A model generated the notes under the pieces. That model searched no databases. It saw only the letters and a program-made list of their open reading frames with translations, and was not told the origin of the DNA. A stretch of 64,000 nucleotides of DNA from Vitrella brassicaformis CCMP3155 (taxonomy: Eukaryota > Protista > Chromerida): the NCBI GenBank assembly GCA_001179505.1, contig CDMY01000384.1:1-64000 (forward strand), given 5' to 3'. The position numbers were made by a program, and so were the translations under genes. This document shows, one piece after another, positions 9,370-64,000 of this stretch (position 1 is its first letter; every line of letters begins with the position of its first letter).

Positions 9370-11945
9370 TTATTCTCTCTGCCCTGGAGGTCTCTCCGTC
9401 CTGATGTTGCTCACCGCTCTCGGCGCCGTCATGGCCCCCCTTCGCCGCAGTGTGCGCTTCCGCCACTTGAGCGAGCGCTGTGCCGCCTCGCTCACACACG
9501 CCTCTGCCGTCACTCTGCCGTGTGTGGCCGATGGGCTGCTGTCGTCGCGTGATGCGGGTGACTCGGAGGGCGGGGAGGGGGCTGGCGCATCTGATGGCGT
9601 GTCGATGCGAGCAGAAGGGGAGGTGGCTTCTGCTGGGGGCTCGGCGGTAGTGACAGTGGCCTCGCGTTGGCTCTTCTGCGCCGACTGGGCCTGGCTTGAT
9701 ATGATCGTCACCCTGCCCCGACAAAACAGAGGCAGAGCGATGCATCGACCACGAACCGTGAGATGAATCGTATTGTCCTTCCCTTACTCCCTCCCTCCCT
9801 CCCTCCCTTCCATCCTCACCAGAAGATTGATACGAAGCCGACCCACAGCACGCGCAGGTCGGTCGGCACCAGCCCATAGGTAACGAGCGACACAAACGGC
9901 CAGAATTTGAGCCCCGCTATCACCAATGGAATCGCAGACGCCTTTATGGCACGCCAGATGACCGGCAACGGATCCAGCTGCACGCAACACACACACCAAT
10001 CAACCACACGAACGTCCACATCACACACATCCGTTGTCTAGACCATCTTGTGTATCTATCTGCCATAGTACCTCCAGTATGCCGAGATAGAGCACATAGC
10101 AGGCATTCCAGAAGGGCGCGAAGACGGCCCGGTCGGTGACGATCTTGCCCAGGGTGGTCGGCCAGTAGCTCTCCCACTGCAGCACCGCCTCGAAGAACAG
10201 ATCGTTTAGGTGGTACCACACGTGGCTGAGTGGTCCGTGCAGCAGGAGACCGGCAGAGGCGGAGCGAAACAGCCGAAGTCGGTCGATGCCAGCCAGCCCA
10301 CGGCCTTCATTCATCTGCACACGCGAGATGGCAACCAAGGAAATGTCTGGTGGTTCCCCTGCCTGTCTGCCCCTGATCTGATGAGTCAGTCGTTCGTTCC
10401 TTGCTCACCCACCCCCCCACCCACCTGAGCCGTCCAGTCCCCGATTGCATAGACCACTCCTGATGTGAGACCCTTGGTGACTACGGGGTCATCATGCAGC
10501 ATCCGCATGTACACATTCAGGTTGTCGAGCGGCGCCCGCATCAAGATCTCGCTCGTCGTCCACCCACGGTAGATGCTCTCATCCACACGCAGGAAGGACT
10601 GGGCAGTCGTGACGGCCATGATGGTGAGAAACACCAAGTTGAAGAAAAGGTTGACGAGCCTCTCCTCTTCTCTCTTGGTCGCCACGAGGCCCTTGAACAG
10701 CACCGGGGGAGGCTCCTCAATCGCAGGTACGGCGCCGACGGCCTTGAGAGCCGACTCATCGGGGAGCAGCACTCGATTGACGAGGGAGTCGATCTCAGCA
10801 TTGTACATGGGCCGCCAGTCGTTGGCGAGAAGCTCCCTTGTCATCGTGTCGTAGACATCTTCCTCCTTTGTCATGTTGCCCGACACGAAGACGCCGGTCC
10901 CATTGAACCCATCGCCATTGGTGGGGACAGTAAACGACCCTTCTGGCCCAAAATTAGCCTGCAGCAGCTGCCGGGCGATCTCAGCCGCTGACGAGGCAGT
11001 TGGTGCGGCACTGCTGGCCGCTTCATCGATTAATGCTGCTGACGGCTCCTCTTGCGCCTTTTGAGCGAGATAGCCGGCCACCACAGAGCCGAGCGACTCC
11101 GGCTCGTGTAGTCGTATGCTGACGGGCTCTCCGTTCTTGTCAAAACAAGGCCGTGAGCAGCGGGGGATTGCCTGGACGGCACTAAGGACATCCGGCTGGC
11201 CGCCTGTCCTCTGCATCGTTGGCACATCAGAGCTGGACACAAACTCATGGACGCCAGGGAGGCCCTTGGCAGCCAGGAACACCCTCAGCGATGGCCGAGA
11301 GGTGCCGTCACCGGATGGCTGCAGCAGCGCCAGGCCGCATCCCTCCAGCTTGGACTCGTCCTTGCACGCCGCCTTCATGCACGCCGATGGCCACACTGTC
11401 ACGAAGGATGCGAAGGCAGGGAAAGAGGCACCTCCTGGCTGCGAAGGCTGCACCAGAGTCAGCGGATGGAAGGCCACAGACATGCCCTCCTCATCAGATG
11501 TGGAGGGGCACGGAGTGAGTGGCCGCGGCCCTGACAGAGTCGACATAACGCAGCCGCCCCGACCCGCCGCAAAGGATTCCGTCAATGCGGTCTTGAGGAC
11601 GTCATCCACACATCGACTGAGGTCGGCAGGGTCCTCTTGCGGCGGGGAAGTGCCAGACGCAGTCGAGGGAGCCACACAGTCGGCAGCTATCTCCATGCCA
11701 GCCGCAAATCCTCCCAGCACGTCAGATAACGATGCATCAACGCCCTGGCCTTTCAAGAAAGTCCCAATGTGGCCATCGACGCGGTCAGTCAGCAGCTGAC
11801 TACTGGCTGTTTTCGTCGCTGCCAGGGGCTTCGTTCGCAGACGGGATGGCGACACTCTAGTGATGAGTGGCGGTGGCTGTGCTGGCGGGAGGAAGGCCTG
11901 CGACGCAGCTGGCAAGAGCGCCACGATGCAGCTGAGCGCATTCAT
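9370..11945 (-). CDS. Plastid-targeted Mpv17/PMP22 family membrane protein with a degenerate FBPase/SBPase-like N-terminal domain
   Basis: Signal peptide ending ASQA-F plus a transit-like region. C-terminal RAPLDN..Y...L.DDPVVTKGLTSGVVYAIGDWTAQ, RLFRS..G..LHGPLSH.WY, KIVTDRAVFAPFWN, AGLKFWPFVSLVTYGLVPTDLRVLWV match the plant plastid Mpv17/PMP22 subgroup. Confidence 0.85.
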
Positions 11946-12185
11946 CTTCAGCTGAAGGGCATCCTTCAAGTTGGTAATTGTTGATCGGATCTCTTTGCCG
12001 ACGTGCCCACGGGCATTATGCACACATCAGATGTATCAAAACCGCTCTCGTGAGATCCGCAACTCAGCTCGCAGCAGCTCGCCTTTTTCAGAGAAGCTGC
12101 TGAAAGGAAGAGAAGGGGCAGGCCGGCCGTGCAATCTCCGCTGTAGTCTTCCCGCTCGTTGTTGCGCTGTTGCATCTGCATATCG

Positions 12186-56200: not shown

Positions 56201-58657
56201 AGGTGGGTCATGGGTATAGGGGTCGGTACTGTGGCGGCAGCTTCAAGGGCATGGCGGCGAAGGTGGCCTACCTCCGAGACCTGCACGTCACGTCGCTGTG
56301 GATGTCCCCACTAATGCAGAACACCAAATGCACTTTCGACGGTAGGTATCCACTCACAGCGCACAGATGTGTCCATCTCGCTGGTCAGGTCATGCTGTGT
56401 CTTTCTCTCTCTGTGTGTGTGTGTGTCATGCAGGGTCCGCCCCGAGCAACTGGGAGCGCATCAACAGCCACTTCGGTACGTCAGCTGACCTGCAGTCGCT
56501 CGTCACGGCCGCCCACAGCCAGCACATCGGCCTGATACCCGAGGTGGTCGTCAACCACGTCGGCAGGGCGGGGCCGCACTGGGGCGACGTCGTGTCGTCC
56601 CAGCGGCCCGCATACGCCACCATTTACCCCTTCAACGCCACCCACTTCTACCGCCCCTTCGCAAAGTGCCACCCTGCCAGCGAGGTGGCCAGCACCTCCA
56701 AGCTCACATCACGCGAGCGCATCAGACGGCTGGAGCAGTGCTGGCTCAATAGCTACCCCGACCTCGATACGACCGACCCATTCGTGGAGGAGTATCTCTC
56801 ACAGTGGGCTCTTGACGTGGTGCTGCGGTACCAGTTCGACGGCGTTGCTGTGAGGGACATCGGACATGTCGACACGGCTTTCTGGGAGCGGTTCCTGCGG
56901 CACTTGTCCACCCCAACAGAGCGGGGGGCGAGGAAAATGTGGGCGATCGGCGAAGGCATGACCTTTCCCGATGAAGCGCTTGGCTCGAGGGCGTTGCAGC
57001 TGCAGCACCTGGCGGCTTACCAACACCGGCAGCAGGCCAGCATGTTTGATGGCGTGCTCAACTACCCCCTGACATGGGCGCTGCGAGAGGCCTTCGCGCC
57101 CGATGTGGTGAGACGCAAGTCGATGCACGGGGTGGCCGAGACCTTCGCCCTCATGAAGCAGCTCTACAGCGCTCCAGGTCGAGCGGTGAACTTCCTGGAG
57201 AGTGTGGACATGCCCCGGTTTCTGCACGGAACGCTCCCATGGGACATGGGGCGGAACGAGGCGCCAAGCCGGGACACGCTGTCGATGGACGCACCGTCTG
57301 TGCGGCAGTACCAGAATGCACTCACCATTGTGGGGGCTGCGGAGGGGGTCCCCATGTTCATCTACGGCACAGAACAGATCAAAATGGCTGACAAAGGTGC
57401 GTTGGCAAGGGGGGAAACACATTGACGGATAAATGTACGTGTGTGTGTGTGTGTGTAGATGAGCGTGCGCCACTCTGGCTGAGTGCGTATGACACGGCAG
57501 AGGGGTCGCTCTACGGCTTCCTGAAGACCCTCAGTGCCCTCCGCGTCAACGGGCATCTCGACGGGCCGCAGAGAGAGCTCCTGGTGACGGAGACAGGGAG
57601 GGAGGGGAAAGACCGCCCCAGCCCACCCACCCACCCAACCACATGTGTGTGTCGTGTGTCTTGTCTCAGGTGGAAGATGACGTATACGCCTTCAGCCGGG
57701 GCGACGGCGGCAGTGCCGGCACAGGCACATACGCCATCGTCGTCGCCACCAACATGGGCGTCGGCAAACACACGACCATCAAGATCCCCAAACGCGCCCT
57801 GCCCTCCTCGCTTGTCGACACTGATGCGGCAGAGCAGGGTCTGTGTGAGGCACTGATTCCTTTGGGCAACGCGGCTCACTGCTTTGGGCTGAGTGTGCGG
57901 TTGGAGGGCAAGGAGAAGTGTGTCGTGCCTAAGGGAGAGGGGGACGCTGCGCAGGTGGAGGAGATATATGACCCTGACACTTGCCTGGTCAGCAAGCCCA
58001 CACACACACACACACGACATATAGCCACCCACCGCTTGTGTGTTCCGTCTCTGTGCCACGCACAGGCGCAGGAGGGCTGCTGCTGGGTGCCCATGTCCGG
58101 CCAGCCGTCGTGCTTCAAAGCCAGAGAGGGAAACGGAGACAAAGGTGCCCTCACAGCACAGGCCCTGTCAGCGCCGTCACCGTCGAGTGACTGCCCGACG
58201 GACGCTCTGTTCGAGGAGAGGTGGCCGTGTGGCTCAATCCGCGACCAACACGCTTGCAGGGTAAGTGGGCACACAGACCATGTGAATGAGCACCGGCTGG
58301 GTAATCATCTGAGTGCGTGTCTGTCTCATGCAGGCTCAAGGGTGCTGCTGGGACCCCCAGCCCGACTCGTTAACGAGCCCGCCATGCTTCACCACATCAC
58401 CCCATTCTCCCCCCAGCCCCCACACACACGCATCAACGTCGGCGTCGTCTCTCCAGGCCGACACCACCCAGTCGCCCCCGCCGCCGCCGCAGCAGCTGAC
58501 CACAAGTGACTGCTACCCTGTGTCTGCCCCTGGGGGCGAGGAGGGCGATGGTTATGTGCACATTCCCATCCGTGGTGGGATGCCCCGGGTGCTGCTGCCC
58601 AGACACACGTACACGCCGTCAGCGGCAGTGCAGGTCCATGGCATCAGCGATGAATGA
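50784..58657 (+). CDS. Giant secreted modular protein: acidic/Thr-rich stalk, 4 beta-sandwich-like modules, 5 Cys-rich repeats, GH13 alpha-amylase-like domain, 2 trefoil-like domains
   Basis: Leu-rich signal/anchor. GH13 motifs IYQVVTDRF, YCGGSFKG, SLWMSP, EVVVNH, YPDLDT, FDG, IGE, LNYP, NFLESVD.PRF, GVPMFIYGTEQ, ERAPLW. Trefoil-like ERWPCG..../GCCW....PCF. Confidence 0.85.
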
Positions 58658-59077: not shown

Positions 59078-59109
<32 letters not shown>

Positions 59110-60217
59110 GGATGTAAGGAGACTTGATATGATGTAGTATGACAGTGGGAGTGTCCACATGCATATAAATGTGTGCAGGGTACGGTCGGTACACACAGAG
59201 GCGGGGAGAGAGCCACGACACGCACACACTTTGTGTCACCAGGCAGACAGACAGACAGATGCCATAGAGGTCTCGATAAGCTCAACCAGTGAGAGCCTCA
59301 GCGCCCTGTCCGTCGGCATTTCCTTGGTGTGGCAGCACCTGGCAACGCAAACCGATGAAGGCTCGCCGCGCCTCATCGACTGACATCGCCGGGCGCTCCC
59401 CGACCACGGAGTTGCCGACGTGATGGAGCGTCTTGTTGCAAGGGGAGAGAGAAGCGCACGCAAAAATCGACACAGGAAAGCAGCTACAGTAGAAGCTCAG
59501 ACCAGCTTGACAAATCAACAACTCATCCATCCATCCAGCCAGCCATCCAGCCATCGACTCATCGACTCAGGTCACTCAATCACTCATCCGCTCACGGAGA
59601 AACGCATACCTCTGCACATGAAGTGAAGGTCAGAAAGCGTATTGGCTGGCGAGGCGGGGACGCTCAGCCGTTTACTTTGCTGCGAAAAACGAGGCAAAGC
59701 AAAGAATGACAGAGACAGAACGGAGAAAGAAAGACACAAGAGCTGGCGCCGCCCAGCTGGCCAGTGATACGTGTGTGTATGCGTGTATGTGTGTATGCAC
59801 TATGTACACCTGCACCCACAGACAGGCATCCGCGTGTGAGCAGCAGTGTGCCGTGATGTCAGCCGGCTGTGGGCCACCGGCCTCTCGTCAGCTCATTCGC
59901 AGACAACGAGGGGGCGATCGCCAACATCGAGCCGACACCACGGCACGTACAGCCGCCCACCACGACCCACAGCAATACACCAAAAGCACCAGACAACCAT
60001 CGTCACACGTGTCGGGTCAGGCAGGACCTTCCTTAAGTCTTAAGTACCTGTGTTGTCACGCATACATGACAGACATCATGTGTATAAAGCGGCCCCATGC
60101 CCGCATCCACGCCACAACGAGAAACGACCGATGAAAGAAACGAATAAAACCCCACAACGACCGACCAACACACGAAGATCGCTTCACACAGCATCTATCC
60201 ATCCATTCATCCATCCA

Positions 60218-63200
60218 TCAGGGGTGGCTAAGTGTCGACCCCTGCCGAGTGAGCTGCCTGGCCATTTGGTTCTTGAGGCTCAGCTGCACCGTCTGCACAC
60301 TCACGGCGTGGCTGGTCAGGGGCGTATAAGGCATGAGCACCGACGAGGTGCTCCCCTGCGGCCGCATCCGGTGGGTCGGGAAGAGGATGGGCTTGGCGGG
60401 TATGCCGCCGAACCGCTCGCCGCGCTCGAACTCCTCCCCCTTCATCATCAACGACATGGGGGCCAGGTAGGAGCCGTCAGCCTTCATTGGACGGTAAGGA
60501 GATCCAGGCACATGGGTGCGTCGGGATGGAGGGAAAAGGTGTGTGTGTGTGAGTGATTGTGTGTGTATACCATGTTGGTTGTGTAGAGGACGACGGCGCG
60601 TGTGCCGACTGTGCACCTGCGGCCTATGGTGATGGTGCCCATCTTCATGATGCGGTCCTCAAACAGGTGGCCTGCACAACACACCAACAGACACACACAC
60701 ACGACACACACATGCACTCCCAAATCCCAAATGCGATTTCCCCTCCCTCCCTCTCTCCCTCTCTCCCCTGTCAGCTCAGCTCACCCTGCACAGTGACATC
60801 GTCGTTGATGCAGGCGTCATCGCCAATCGCCACCAAGTCAGGCTCGGTCAGGTGAGGCGTCGCCATGTACACCCTGCTGCCAATCCGCGCACCCAGCAAA
60901 TGGAACCACATGGGCAGCAGGGGAGTGCCGATCAGCACCCGGATGAAGCTGTTGAAGGCCAGGTCTTCCTCCAGCGCATTGGAGAGCTCGGCGCGCCAGA
61001 CGAACGACGACCAGAGGGGCGCCTGCTGCTCGCCGTACCTGCCCACCAGCAGCCACTTGCCGGCGATGGCGACTATGGCGTTGACGGAGCCGTACAGCCA
61101 GAACATGGCCGGCATGAGGAAGAGGCCCCACCAGCCGAGATCGGTCAGAGTGATGGTCCCCACATACCTGACACACACACACACACAGGGAGAGAGAGAG
61201 AGATTCAAACACACCTCTCCCTGTCTGTCCGGTTCTAGTGGATACCTACCATGCAAGCAGAAACGAGTAGACCGACACGATCCCCGGCAGTATGGTCCTC
61301 AGCGCCTCAATCGACCCCCGTATAGGGTACAGGTGCACAGGGGGGTTGAAGGTGCGGCTGTCCCCGCTGTCCTTGACCACGGCACGGTTGGCGAGCGGGA
61401 AGGGCAGCGACCCCAGCCACGACGTCCCATCCTTGGCCTCGTCCGCACCGGGGGCAAGGGACATCACCCCCAGCAGCGTCTCCTTGCCGAAGCGGCTGCC
61501 CCCCGGCACACAGGCGTTGTTCCCGAGGAATGTCCTCTCCTCACACATCACCTTGCTGATGCAGAAGTTGCGCTTGGCGTCGACGGTCCAGCCCCCCAGG
61601 CCGACGAAGTCTGCCACGAAGCAGTCGTCACCGATGTGCAGCATATCGGGGGTCCAGTGGCGGGCGTCGGAGATCTCCACACGGCGCCCGAGCTTGGCGC
61701 CAAGAAGGTTGAAGTAGGTCCGGGTGAACATGGTGGAGTAGAACTGAGTGAGGCGGAGGAGGCCCAGAGAGAAGCACATGGATGGTATGGTATAGGTGTG
61801 TGGGGGGGGAGCTGACCTGGTGGGCGAATGTGAGAGTGATCTGTTGAGCCCAGTGGTTGACCCACCACCTCAGGTAGAGCCACCCGTACAGCGGGTAGGC
61901 GCCCTCCTTGATGCGCTGCACCGTCACCCACTTGAGCACCACCGTGAACAGCAGGTACCACAGCAGCCCGCCCACCACCAGCACCGGCGCCCACGCAGCT
62001 CCCACAGAGAACCCCTCATTGGTCGACACACGCACGGCCTCGGTCGTTGCCCAGAGCCAGGCCATCAGGGGCACCCCAAGGGCGAGGAAGATCACGTAGT
62101 AGCCGAGGAGCACGCCAAAGCAGAACATGGCGAGGGTGGCGGCGCCCACACGTCTGTGCTCGACCCTGTCGTCCTCGACGTCGATGGCGATGGTGAGGTG
62201 CCGCTTTGGCGTGCGGACGTTGGCAGCATTGCTGTCGTCGTGGGTCTTCTTGACGGATGACTTGGTGGGGATGGCCACTCTGTTGGAACCCCTTGCAGGT
62301 GCTCCCTCCCAGTGTGCTGATGCGGGGACTTTTTGGCCAGAATGGAGGACGGCGAGGTTGCCGATGGAGCCGCCGTCGCCAATCTCCGTGTTGAGGTTCA
62401 CGCCACTGGGGGGCAGCAACGCAGAGAGAGGGGTGGTGGTGGTGTGTGTGCGTGCGTGTGTGGGGCTGTGGTCTCACCTTCGCTGTCCGAGCACAGCGCC
62501 TCGGCCTAGTTTCACCGTTCCAAGCCTCAGCTTCCCGTCCTCGACCTCCCAGCATGACACCCGAGCACCCACATTGATCACCTGCACACCCACACCCACA
62601 CAGAGGTGAGTGGTTGTCCATGTAGAATGCGGCCATCCATCCCCTTCCTCTCTCTCTGCTCACCACATCGTCATCGAGTGTCAGGAGGTCATAGCCCGAC
62701 ACGAGCGTGGAGGCGATGTGCACGTTGCGGCCGACCTTGACGCCATACAGCCGCAGCACCCACGACAGCACTGGGGTGCCCGAGAACATGGCCAGGGGGG
62801 CGCCCCAGGTCTCGACGATCCACCACCTCAGGAAGTACCAGCCCCACCTACTCATTCATTCACAGACAACACAAGACATGTCAAAGAACCGCTCCTTCCC
62901 TCTCTCTCCCTCTCTCTCTCTCGTCTGTCTCTCTTCCTTACAGAGGGTGTTCTCCGGGCACCACTTTGCCGAGGACGATCCACTTGACGGCGACGGACAC
63001 CAGCACCCACACGGCCCATGACACGATCGTCCACGCGGGGAATGTGAAGATGACGTATGTGACGGAGTACTGGTCCAAAGTCTCCTCGATCGCCCACAGC
63101 CCGGCCGCCACCCACAGCGCCGCGAAGGCCGACAGGAAGAGCAGGAACACACCCTGCAGGAACCACACCGTCCAGCGCGTCAGAGCCGGGGCCTGATAGC

Positions 63201-64000
63201 ACAAGACAACACAGCCACACATGTCCATGAGGACAAAGGTCCATCACACACCACCACACTCATCTCGTTCCTACCCCGCCTGATTCGGTTTGTGTCTGCA
63301 ATCTTGACTTGATCGACTTAAGACCCGTCGCAAATCGTGTCGCCAGGCGGCCCAGCGGCGTCTGTGGTGGTGTGTGGGTGAACACACGCGCCCGGGGCAG
63401 CCGCAAAGGCACCCCCTCGGCCCTGCATGTGTCGGTGATGTTGGTGGCGAGCTTGCGGACTGTCCGGGCGTCGTAGAGGTCGCGGACGGCCGTGGGAACC
63501 ATCCGGATCTTCTTGCGCAGGGCGGAGATGAACTGACGATCGACACACGAGGGACTGTGCATGTGGTCGTGTGATGCGGTGTGGTGTGGTGTGGTTGTGC
63601 GAGAGTGGGTAGGTGCCCGGGCAGGTACCTACCTGTGCGGCGCTGAGCGAGTTGCCTCCCAGTTGGAAGAAGTCGTCTTCGGCGCCGACCCTCTCCACAT
63701 TCAACACCTGCACTCACACACAGAGAGAAATCCCCGCACCCCTACACATCACACCCTCTCACAACACTCTCGCTCCCTCCCTCCCTCCCTCCCTCTCACG
63801 TCCGAGAACAGCTCAGCGAGCGTCGTTTCCAGGACTCCCTCAGGCTCAAGGTACTCGTTCCCCGGCCCCCCACCGGCACCACTGCCCGGTGCGGTCTCGC
63901 TGCCCGGCGTGGGCATCTTCTCGAGCGCCTTCCTGTCCACCTTGCCAGTGGGTGAGATGGGAATGGCGTCGAGCAGGACGTACCGGGCGGGCACCATGTA
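60218..64000 (-). CDS. Membrane-bound single-module NRPS-like enzyme, epsilon-poly-L-lysine synthetase (Pls)-type: A-domain end, PCP, three TM plus left-handed beta-helix acetyltransferase-like repeats; 5' part outside window
   Basis: A10 motif PISPTGKVDRKAL and PCP DDFFQLGGNSL..LYDARTVRKLA. Repeated AVKWIVLG...PL/WGWYFLRWW, KWVTV.RIKEGAYPLYGWLYLRWW and AGKWLLVGRY....PLWSSFVWR units with L.RLYG.KVG/LLGAKLG/LLGARIG. HLFEDRIMK and GIPA end. Interrupted by GT-AG introns. Confidence 0.9.

What the first reader, a model, noticed from the sequence alone, without database searches (positions are those of the whole stretch)
60218..64000. Intron-containing Pls-type homopoly(amino acid) synthetase in a photosynthetic alveolate
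The sequence shows the A-domain C-terminal lysine motif, a carrier domain with intact phosphopantetheine Ser (GGNSL, codon at 63648-63650), and three tandem transmembrane plus hexapeptide/acetyltransferase-like units with no condensation or thioesterase domain. Established knowledge: this is the layout of Streptomyces epsilon-poly-L-lysine synthetase Pls and related membrane-bound isopeptide polymerases (the TIGR02353-type terminal domain), also described in Epichloe fungi. Typical host-style introns show it is a domesticated nuclear gene rather than bacterial contamination. Inference: this alga may make and export a homopoly(amino acid) such as a cationic antimicrobial or a wall/biofilm polymer, a pathway I do not know to be described in chromerids or their apicomplexan relatives.
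Basis: partly seen in the sequence, partly recalled or inferred. Interest (0 to 1): 0.9.

Follow-up and report, generated by a model that had tools for sequence, protein, structure and literature searches.

The report
Polylysine-type synthetase gene in Vitrella
This is the 3' two-thirds of a real, spliced and expressed nuclear gene of the chromerid alga Vitrella brassicaformis, encoding a membrane enzyme of the bacterial epsilon-poly-L-lysine synthetase family; a Vitrella homologue with the same lysine code was already listed in a 2023 paper, so the find is sound but not new.

Summary
On the minus strand, 64000-60218 holds the last 11 of 19 exons of one gene. The window matches Vitrella brassicaformis contig CDMY01000384.1. 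My hand-built 967-residue model is exactly the C-terminal part of the public 1565-residue protein.

The protein has a complete adenylation domain, a carrier domain with its Ser (63650-63648), and a full-length Pls/PosA terminal domain (TIGR02353, 484.8 bits against a cut-off of 423.1). That domain has three pairs of membrane helices and three beta-helix units. There is no condensation or thioesterase domain.

RNA contigs show six of the ten in-window introns removed, while DNA contigs keep them. Neighbouring genes are eukaryotic, so this is not contamination.

The specificity code, DAESIGTVVK, is identical to that of Streptomyces albulus Pls. Poly-lysine is therefore the likely product, but this is inferred.

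Not new: Patil et al. 2023 (PMC10522769, Supplementary Table 2) list "Vitrella brassicaformis (CEM14083.1), DAESIGTVVK, Lys". The scan also noted this gene in an overlapping window (s1-242725) and a Pls-type gene on another piece of this genome (s1-235818).

Added here:
- Orthologues in Chromera and in Piridium.
- A mostly eukaryotic clade that includes Nematostella and Nannochloropsis.
- A chromerid-only insertion in the adenylation domain.

The parts
63800..64000 (-). Exon 9 of 19 (in-window part; the exon starts at 64106 outside the window). Encodes the end of the adenylation domain, including the A10 motif, and the start of the carrier domain.
   Evidence: Frame-0 ORF and GT donor at 63799. 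Identical to public protein P0154. The junction is gapless against the Piridium transcript protein.
63941..63943 (-). Codon of the invariant A10 lysine (PTGK, residue 618), which is Stachelhaus position 10.
63633..63707 (-). Exon 10. Encodes the carrier-domain core with the GGNSL motif.
   Evidence: The junctions are gapless against Piridium.
63648..63650 (-). Codon of the phosphopantetheine-attachment serine (residue 685).
   Evidence: Pfam PP-binding matches residues 658-720.
63275..63532 (-). Exon 11. Encodes the rest of the carrier domain and a variable linker.
   Evidence: Its 3' splice junction (intron 63274-63193) lies in a variable linker. It rests only on frame logic and the public annotation.
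62942..63192 (-). Exon 12. Encodes the first pair of membrane helices (residues about 779-850).
62664..62847 (-). Exon 13. Encodes the start of soluble unit 1 (the WGWYFLRWW region and the first beta-helix turns).
   Evidence: TIGR02353 profile positions 75-139. An RNA joint at 62581/62664 removes the intron downstream of this exon, 62663-62582.
62478..62581 (-). Exon 14. Encodes beta-helix turns of unit 1.
   Evidence: RNA joints on both sides: 62577/62660 (cut +4) and 62405/62478.
61817..62405 (-). Exon 15. Encodes the end of unit 1, a disordered linker (residues 1000-1031), the second pair of membrane helices, and the start of unit 2.
   Evidence: RNA joint at 61743/61817 in two runs.
61250..61743 (-). 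Exon 16. Encodes unit 2 and the start of the third helix pair.
   Evidence: TIGR02353 profile positions 336-500, E 4e-33. An RNA contig and a loose end across intron 61249-61168.
60785..61167 (-). Exon 17. Encodes the third pair of membrane helices and the start of unit 3.
   Evidence: TIGR02353 profile positions 517-633, E 9e-34. X1 record 1 spans the flanking introns.
60571..60671 (-). Exon 18. Encodes the family-invariant Q-x-H-L-F-E-D-R motif of unit 3 (residues 1444-1451, starting in exon 17).
   Evidence: Invariant columns Q675, H677, L678, D681 and R682 of alignment A1. The 101 unplaced letters of RNA record 1 equal this exon's length.
60218..60481 (-). Exon 19. Encodes the end of unit 3, a 58-residue tail, and the stop codon TGA (60220-60218).
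60395..63156 (-). Genomic span, introns included, of the Pls/PosA terminal (polymerisation) domain, residues 789-1507.
   Evidence: TIGR02353 484.8 bits against a cut-off of 423.1. AlphaFold2 model pLDDT 89.9. TM-score by query 0.87 to the predicted structure of PosA residues 617-1331.
60050..60217 (-). Start of the 3' untranslated region.
   Evidence: RNA contig X1 record 1 continues without a break from the last exon through 60050. It has about 960 more letters beyond the stretch that was laid.

Best explanation
Window 64000-60218 (minus strand) is the 3' part of a native, expressed nuclear gene of Vitrella brassicaformis. The whole gene has 19 exons and encodes a 1565-residue protein. It is a single-module, NRPS-like, membrane-bound synthetase of cationic homo-poly(amino acid)s, belonging to the Pls/PosA family.

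Inferred mechanism:
1. The N-terminal adenylation domain activates L-lysine as the adenylate. This rests on a specificity code identical to that of Streptomyces albulus Pls.
2. The lysine is loaded as a thioester on the phosphopantetheine arm of Ser685.
3. The C-terminal domain holds six membrane helices in three pairs, carrying three left-handed beta-helix units packed as a pseudo-trimer. It catalyses repeated attack by a side-chain amino group on the thioester.
4. This builds an isopeptide-linked poly-lysine that leaves the cell.

Shown here: gene structure, splicing, expression, family membership, fold, the specificity code, and conservation in Chromera and Piridium.

Inferred only: the substrate, the epsilon linkage, chain length, export, the membrane in which the enzyme sits, and the biological role.
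For: - Gene model: my model equals the public protein's C-terminal 967 residues exactly. The full gene has 18 GT-AG introns of 72-142 nt.
- Splicing: RNA contigs from two runs lack introns 5-10 of the window. DNA contigs of the same organism keep them.
- Genomic context: neighbours on the 90-kb contig are eukaryotic, intron-containing genes (DEAD helicase, TMEM220, DUF1232, GH13). G+C content is uniform across the region.
- Family membership: TIGR02353 484.8 bits against 423.1, and TIGR01733 385.5 against 317.4.
- Domain content: Pfam finds AMP-binding, AMP-binding_C and PP-binding, with no C or TE domain.
- Specificity code: DAESIGTVVK. This equals S. albulus Pls (experimentally Lys) in Supplementary Table 2 of PMC10522769. 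Ala at position 2 is the Lys-type residue according to that paper's mutagenesis.
- Conserved residues: every column that is invariant across the 56-sequence alignment, which includes this protein, carries the shared residue.
- Fold: the model has pLDDT 89.9, and its best match is the characterised PosA, with TM-score by query 0.87.
- Orthologues: Piridium (transcript-derived, 55% identity) and Chromera carry the same code and group with Vitrella at 100/100 support.
Against: - No chemistry: no polymer has been reported from chromerids, and none can be tested here.
- The code predicts the amino acid activated. It does not predict linkage or chain length.
- The nearest characterised enzymes are only about 27-35% identical.
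- The chromerid adenylation domains carry an extra 45-78 residues between motifs A6 and A7, of unknown effect.
- No partner phosphopantetheinyl transferase was looked up.
- RNA contigs gave no coverage of in-window introns 1-4. Three of these are supported only by collinearity with Piridium, and one only by frame logic and the public annotation.
Confidence: 0.8

Rival explanations
1. The enzyme is a genuine Pls/PosA-family synthetase but polymerises a different building block, such as ornithine, diaminobutyrate, diaminopropionate or beta-lysine. Alternatively, it makes short oligomers or a cell-bound conjugate rather than free epsilon-poly-lysine.
For: - The family makes at least six different polymers.
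- Code-based predictions are imperfect. PosA's closest code match was a Lys-activating domain, yet it uses ornithine.
- A chromerid-specific insertion sits in the adenylation domain.
Against: - All ten code positions equal those of the experimentally proven lysine enzyme.
- Position 2 is Ala. The Orn, Dab/Dap and beta-Lys enzymes have Met, Phe and Gly there.
- The code is conserved unchanged in three chromerid species.
Confidence: 0.13
2. The gene is a decaying or functionless relic of an old transfer. It is transcribed but makes no active enzyme.
For: - There is no product evidence.
- The annotated neighbouring genes include no obvious pathway partner.
Against: - The reading frame is open across 19 exons.
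- All core motifs and all family-invariant residues are kept.
- The curated HMM cut-offs are exceeded.
- RNA depth is about 17 in one run.
- Orthologues are kept in three genera at 37-55% identity with an unchanged code.
Confidence: 0.05
3. The stretch is bacterial contamination or an assembly artefact rather than an algal gene.
For: The family is overwhelmingly bacterial.
Against: - The gene has eighteen spliceosomal-type introns, and spliced RNA exists.
- It is embedded in a 90-kb contig of eukaryotic genes with the same composition.
- The closest relatives are other chromerids.
Confidence: 0.01

Closest known systems
Epsilon-poly-L-lysine synthetase Pls of Streptomyces albulus (BAG68864.1; adenylation-domain structure PDB 7wew)
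   Same: - Same architecture: A - carrier - six membrane helices with three soluble units, and no C or TE domain.
- Identical ten-residue specificity code, DAESIGTVVK.
- The Vitrella adenylation domain matches 7wew at E 2.2e-78.
   Different: - Eukaryotic nuclear gene with 18 introns.
- Longer, at 1565 residues, where most bacterial members listed have about 1300-1350.
- A 78-residue insertion between A6 and A7, and a 58-residue C-terminal tail.
- Sits in a different clade of the family tree, together with eukaryotic sequences.
- Product not demonstrated.
Delta-poly-L-ornithine synthetase PosA of Acinetobacter baumannii (A0A5K6CNB8; PMC10522769)
   Same: - The whole C-terminal domain superposes on the predicted PosA structure: TM-score by query 0.87, 754 aligned positions, 27% identity.
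- Same pseudo-threefold arrangement of beta-helices on a helical bundle as that paper describes.
   Different: PosA's code is DMEHNGTVSK, with Met at position 2 (Orn). Vitrella has Ala there (Lys).
Fungal epsilon-PL synthetase of Epichloe festucae (PMC7179176) and other fungal homologues (Umbelopsis, Basidiobolus, Tilletia)
   Same: Eukaryotic members of the same family. Umbelopsis and Basidiobolus carry Lys-type codes.
   Different: The fungal sequences in my tree (Umbelopsis, Basidiobolus) fall outside the chromerid-containing clade. This points to a separate history. Epichloe itself was not in my data set.
Eukaryotic homologues in Chromera velia (Cvel_1691), Piridium sociabile, Nematostella vectensis (XP_001625520) and Nannochloropsis oceanica
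   Same: - Lys-type codes throughout.
- Support: chromerids 100/100. Chromerids with Nematostella and sequences from uncultured organisms, two of which lie on eukaryote-like contigs, 90/87. Adding Nannochloropsis 85/76.
   Different: - Only the three chromerid proteins share the large A6-A7 insertion.
- Chromera has an extra C-terminal extension of about 500 residues with no Pfam match.
- None of these has been characterised.

Membership tests
Pls/PosA family of cationic homo-poly(amino acid) synthetases (NCBIfam TIGR02353-type) | C-terminal 'NRPS terminal domain' that matches TIGR02353 over its full length and above the curated cut-off | tested here: met
   484.8 bits against a cut-off of 423.1. 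Residues 789-1507 cover profile positions 6-695 of 695 in one stretch. The exon-wise hits are collinear.
Pls/PosA family of cationic homo-poly(amino acid) synthetases (NCBIfam TIGR02353-type) | Single N-terminal amino-acid adenylation domain with all core motifs | tested here: met
   TIGR01733 scores 385.5 bits against 317.4. Pfam AMP-binding scores 261 bits, and AMP-binding_C is also found. Motifs A3-A10 are readable in P0154. Most of this domain lies outside the window.
Pls/PosA family of cationic homo-poly(amino acid) synthetases (NCBIfam TIGR02353-type) | Carrier domain with the phosphopantetheine serine | tested here: met
   GGNSL motif with Ser685, codon 63650-63648. PP-binding scores 43.9 bits.
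Pls/PosA family of cationic homo-poly(amino acid) synthetases (NCBIfam TIGR02353-type) | Six membrane helices in three pairs, alternating with three related soluble units of left-handed beta-helix type | tested here: met
   Hydropathy peaks fall in three pairs. The AlphaFold2 model shows three helix pairs and three beta-helix units, pLDDT 89.9. Single units match hexapeptide acetyltransferases.
Pls/PosA family of cationic homo-poly(amino acid) synthetases (NCBIfam TIGR02353-type) | No classical condensation or thioesterase domain | tested here: met
   Pfam scan of the full protein at E <= 0.001 finds neither.
Pls/PosA family of cationic homo-poly(amino acid) synthetases (NCBIfam TIGR02353-type) | Asp at code position 1 and Glu at code position 3, which bind the two amino groups of a diamino acid (PMC10522769) | tested here: met
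   The code is D-A-E-S-I-G-T-V-V-K. The rule is taken from the paper.
Pls/PosA family of cationic homo-poly(amino acid) synthetases (NCBIfam TIGR02353-type) | Makes an isopeptide-linked homopolymer of a diamino acid | not testable with these tools
   Needs enzyme assays or mass spectrometry.
Epsilon-poly-L-lysine synthetases proper (Pls) | Lys-type specificity code, with Ala at position 2 | tested here: met
   Identical at 10 of 10 positions to S. albulus Pls as printed in Supplementary Table 2 of PMC10522769.
Epsilon-poly-L-lysine synthetases proper (Pls) | Product is epsilon-linked poly-L-lysine | not testable with these tools
   No chemical data exist for chromerids. A paper search combining Chromera, Vitrella and poly-L-lysine found only papers with no bearing on the polymer.

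The most novel reading that the evidence does not exclude
The chromerid gene belongs to a distinct, mostly eukaryotic lineage of lysine-type Pls synthetases. Its members are Vitrella, Piridium, Chromera, the cnidarian Nematostella, the eustigmatophyte Nannochloropsis and several uncultured organisms, at least two of them intron-poor eukaryotes.

On this reading the lineage was present in the common ancestor of the three sampled chromerid genera and was passed on vertically. The evidence is that the gene tree matches the species tree and that the three chromerid proteins share an insertion in the adenylation domain.

The enzymes would make a polycationic polymer with a role of its own in eukaryotes, for example antimicrobial defence of coral- and invertebrate-associated cells, or a wall or cyst component. 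Whether the parasitic apicomplexans lost it was not tested.
Probability: 0.3. Interest if true: 0.6.

Novelty: already known. Interest (0 to 1): 0.3.

Why it matters
Epsilon-poly-L-lysine is an industrial food preservative and a model polycationic antimicrobial. Its synthetases are a rare example of peptide polymerisation without a condensation domain.

A working enzyme in an alga related to the malaria and Toxoplasma parasites would extend this chemistry to protists. It would offer a eukaryote-adapted enzyme for engineering. It would also raise an ecological question, because Vitrella and Chromera are, to my recollection, coral-associated, and Piridium, again to my recollection, is a mollusc parasite.

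The presence of the gene in Vitrella, with the lysine prediction, is already in print (PMC10522769). The open question is therefore experimental: is the polymer made, and what is it for?

The added value of this report is threefold:
- Evidence for splicing and expression.
- The orthologues in Chromera and Piridium.
- The mostly eukaryotic clade.

Tried and rejected
- Bacterial contamination: rejected, given 18 introns, spliced RNA and eukaryotic neighbours.
- Pseudogene: rejected, given an open frame, kept invariant residues and conserved orthologues.
- Unrelated hexapeptide acetyltransferases: rejected. Single units resemble them in fold, but the whole domain passes the Pls/PosA model and superposes on PosA.
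- Solved structure of the polymerisation domain: none found. The PDB sequence search gave only marginal hits to single beta-helix proteins, Foldseek against the PDB gave the same, and no cryo-EM paper turned up.
This does not prove absence, because the Chromera orthologue was also missed by those searches.
- Further alveolate orthologues, searched with the Chromera protein: none among the 120 listed, again with a word index of limited reach.
- Look-up of earlier findings by sequence: blank.
- One search was malformed (the search term was too long) and was repeated.
- A recent bacterial donor: the most similar bacterial sequences (Planctomycetota, Acidobacteriota, Myxococcota; 36-38% identity in the C-terminal domain) do not group with the chromerids in the trees.
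Full report
**Observation**

The region was read on both strands. The coding signal is on the minus strand and runs off the window at 64000.

I built a gene model by hand from frames and GT-AG boundaries. It has eleven exons:
- 64000-63800
- 63707-63633
- 63532-63275
- 63192-62942
- 62847-62664
- 62581-62478
- 62405-61817
- 61743-61250
- 61167-60785
- 60671-60571
- 60481-60218

The ten introns are 72-113 nt long and all GT-AG. The reading frame is open for 967 residues and ends at TGA 60220-60218.

- The A10 lysine codon is at 63943-63941.
- The GGNSL serine codon is at 63650-63648.

Exon by exon, the translated pieces hit the NCBIfam model TIGR02353 (Pls/PosA family) in collinear order.

**Identity of the locus**

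An exhaustive HMMER search with one exon gave a 51%-identical best hit, P0001. It is a Trinity transcript protein of Piridium sociabile, which NCBI taxonomy places in Vitrellaceae.

A word-indexed search with P0001 returned P0154, the window's own 1565-residue protein. P0154 is encoded on contig CDMY01000384.1 (90,467 bp) of assembly GCA_001179505.1. A paper on algal genome mining names that assembly as Vitrella brassicaformis.

Window coordinates equal contig coordinates. My 967-residue model is an exact suffix of P0154.

Mapping P0154 back on the DNA gives 19 exons and 18 GT-AG introns of 72-142 nt, spanning 66532-60218. The upstream adenylation domain is therefore complete and free of stops.

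**Native, spliced and expressed**

I laid the contigs of two RNA-type runs and two DNA-type runs on 60050-64000.

- RNA contigs skip 61816-61744 (seen in two runs), 62477-62406 and 62663-62582.
- One 2297-letter RNA contig at depth 17 joins the exons across introns 61249-61168, 60784-60672 and 60570-60482.
- Its 101 unplaced letters equal the length of the exon at 60671-60571.
- A loose end in the second run reads straight into the exon that starts at 61167.
- DNA contigs run through the introns without joints.
- There was no RNA coverage of 63745-63086. Of the four introns left without a listed RNA joint, three sit at positions where the Vitrella protein aligns without gaps to the transcript-derived Piridium protein. 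The fourth (63274-63193) lies in a variable linker and rests only on frame logic and the public annotation.

Neighbouring genes on the contig include a DEAD-box helicase, TMEM220, a DUF1232 protein and a 2316-residue GH13 protein. Several have gene spans longer than their coding length, which implies short introns. G+C content is uniform at 0.58-0.64. Contamination is excluded.

**What the protein is**

On the full protein:
- TIGR02353 scores 484.8 bits (cut-off 423.1) in one stretch covering profile positions 6-695 of 695.
- TIGR01733, the adenylation-domain model, scores 385.5 bits (cut-off 317.4).
- Pfam finds AMP-binding, AMP-binding_C and PP-binding, plus a sub-threshold Hexapep match. 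It finds no Condensation or Thioesterase domain.
- Hydropathy shows six hydrophobic segments in three pairs.

An AlphaFold2 model of residues 770-1520, built with a 56-sequence alignment, has mean pLDDT 89.9 and pTM 0.90. It shows three repeats, each with two long helices, short helices and a beta-helix. Only the linker at residues 1000-1031 is disordered.

Against Swiss-Prot models, the best match is the characterised delta-poly-L-ornithine synthetase PosA (residues 617-1331), with TM-score by query 0.87 and E 2.3e-54. After that come single-unit matches to hexapeptide acetyltransferases.

The PDB holds only such single-unit folds. By sequence it holds no polymerisation domain. The Pls adenylation domain is solved as 7wew, which matches the Vitrella protein at E 2.2e-78.

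Every column that is invariant in the 56-sequence family alignment, which includes the Vitrella protein, carries the shared residue. One example is the Q-x-H-L-F-E-D-R motif of the third unit.

**Substrate**

I read the ten Stachelhaus positions from a family alignment and obtained DAESIGTVVK. The same code occurs in Piridium and Chromera. An earlier scan note (s1-242877) had proposed this code, and I confirmed it.

Supplementary Table 2 of Patil et al. 2023 (Commun Biol 6:982, PMC10522769) prints exactly this code for S. albulus Pls, whose substrate is experimentally lysine. The codes for the other substrates differ.

The same paper shows by mutagenesis that code position 2 sets the side-chain length: Ala for Lys, Met for Orn.

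L-lysine is therefore the likely substrate. The mechanism is inferred by homology: adenylation, thioester on Ser685, then repeated attack by a side-chain amine within the membrane domain. It was not shown here.

**Novelty**

The same supplementary table lists [quoted passage not shown]. The main text notes homologues in "Amoebozoa, Metazoa, and Alveota".

I could not map the accession to this locus, because accessions of the window's own protein are masked. However, no other Vitrella homologue appeared in my searches.

Within the scan:
- Note s1-242725 is this same gene, read in an overlapping window.
- Note s1-235818 reports a Pls-type gene on another piece of the same genome. Its follow-up reached the same verdict, solid but not new. 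I found the paper independently before reading that note.

Whichever locus the accession denotes, the family's presence in Vitrella and the lysine prediction are already published. A 2020 survey of algal genomes counted only "2-3 Other(A) genes" in chromerids, without detail.

1. *Orthologues.* Chromera velia Cvel_1691 (2096 residues) and Piridium sociabile carry orthologues. By my recollection, which I did not check here, Piridium is non-photosynthetic.

2. *Phylogeny.* In a careful IQ-TREE analysis (47 rows, 1290 columns, LG+C20 PMSF):
   - Vitrella with Piridium: 100/99.
   - Adding Chromera: 100/100, which matches the species relationships.
   - These group at 90/87 with Nematostella vectensis and four metagenomic sequences. 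One of those (P0077) lies beside a ubiquitin gene and another (P0100) beside Derlin and SNARE genes, so at least two are intron-poor eukaryotes.
   - Adding Nannochloropsis oceanica: 85/76.
   - Adding a sequence whose neighbour is an ECF sigma factor, and is therefore bacterial: 95/98.

   The same ten-row clade appeared in FastTree runs with 196 and 172 rows and in a 67-row mixture-model tree. Fungal sequences (Umbelopsis, Basidiobolus) fall elsewhere. The most similar bacterial sequences (Planctomycetota and others, 36-38% identity) do not join the clade.

   Caveats: Nannochloropsis and the bacterial-context sequence (P0125) sit on long branches, amino-acid composition is heterogeneous across the rows, and the root is unknown.

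3. *A chromerid-only insertion.* The spacing between adenylation motifs A6 and A7 has a median of 25 residues in 202 family members. It is 103, 101 and 71 residues in Vitrella, Chromera and Piridium. Because the Piridium sequence comes from a transcript, the insertion is not an unspliced intron.

**Verdict**

The gene is genuine, complete, expressed and conserved. The poly-lysine product is a good prediction but remains untested. Because the gene and its predicted substrate are already in the literature, interest is modest. The eukaryotic clade and the vertical history within chromerids are the parts worth following up.

Noticed in passing
Outside the window: contig coordinates about 64870-64560 (L001 about 11660-11970), P0154 residues 396-498: The chromerid proteins carry a large insertion between adenylation motifs A6 and A7. 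The spacing is 103, 101 and 71 residues in Vitrella, Chromera and Piridium, against a family median of 25 in 202 sequences. Its effect on the enzyme is unknown.
   Followed up: partly
Proteins P0281, P0307, P0326, P0345, P0354, P0357, P0364: Several bacterial Pls/PosA-family proteins (one named from a Phycisphaerae MAG, the rest unnamed) carry a fused 4'-phosphopantetheinyl transferase domain (PF01648). They are correspondingly longer, at 1537-1946 residues. In effect the synthetase brings its own activating enzyme.
   Followed up: no
L002 10001-15352 and L005 3333-8474 (metagenome contigs): Uninterrupted Pls-type genes of 1783 and 1713 residues lie beside ubiquitin, Derlin and SNARE genes. 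They therefore sit in intron-poor uncultured eukaryotes. They group with the chromerid and Nematostella genes.
   Followed up: partly
window 59090-60217, minus strand: The RNA contig that covers the last exons continues about 1.1 kb past the stop codon, towards the convergent GH13 gene that ends near 58657. This is either a long 3' UTR or overlapping convergent transcripts merged by an unstranded assembly.
   Followed up: no
window 62430-62465, 62585-62602, 63569-63595, 60678-60769: The introns contain CA/GT- and GA-rich simple tracts. In the DNA runs these attract many partly fitting contigs and raise local depth three- to four-fold. Such tracts therefore recur widely in this genome.
   Followed up: no
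My protein searches found no second Vitrella protein. Whether it is a paralogue, and which locus is accession CEM14083.1, remains open.
   Followed up: partly
Protein P0013 (Chromera velia Cvel_1691), residues about 1590-2096: The Chromera orthologue has a C-terminal extension of about 500 residues with no Pfam match at E <= 0.001.
   Followed up: no
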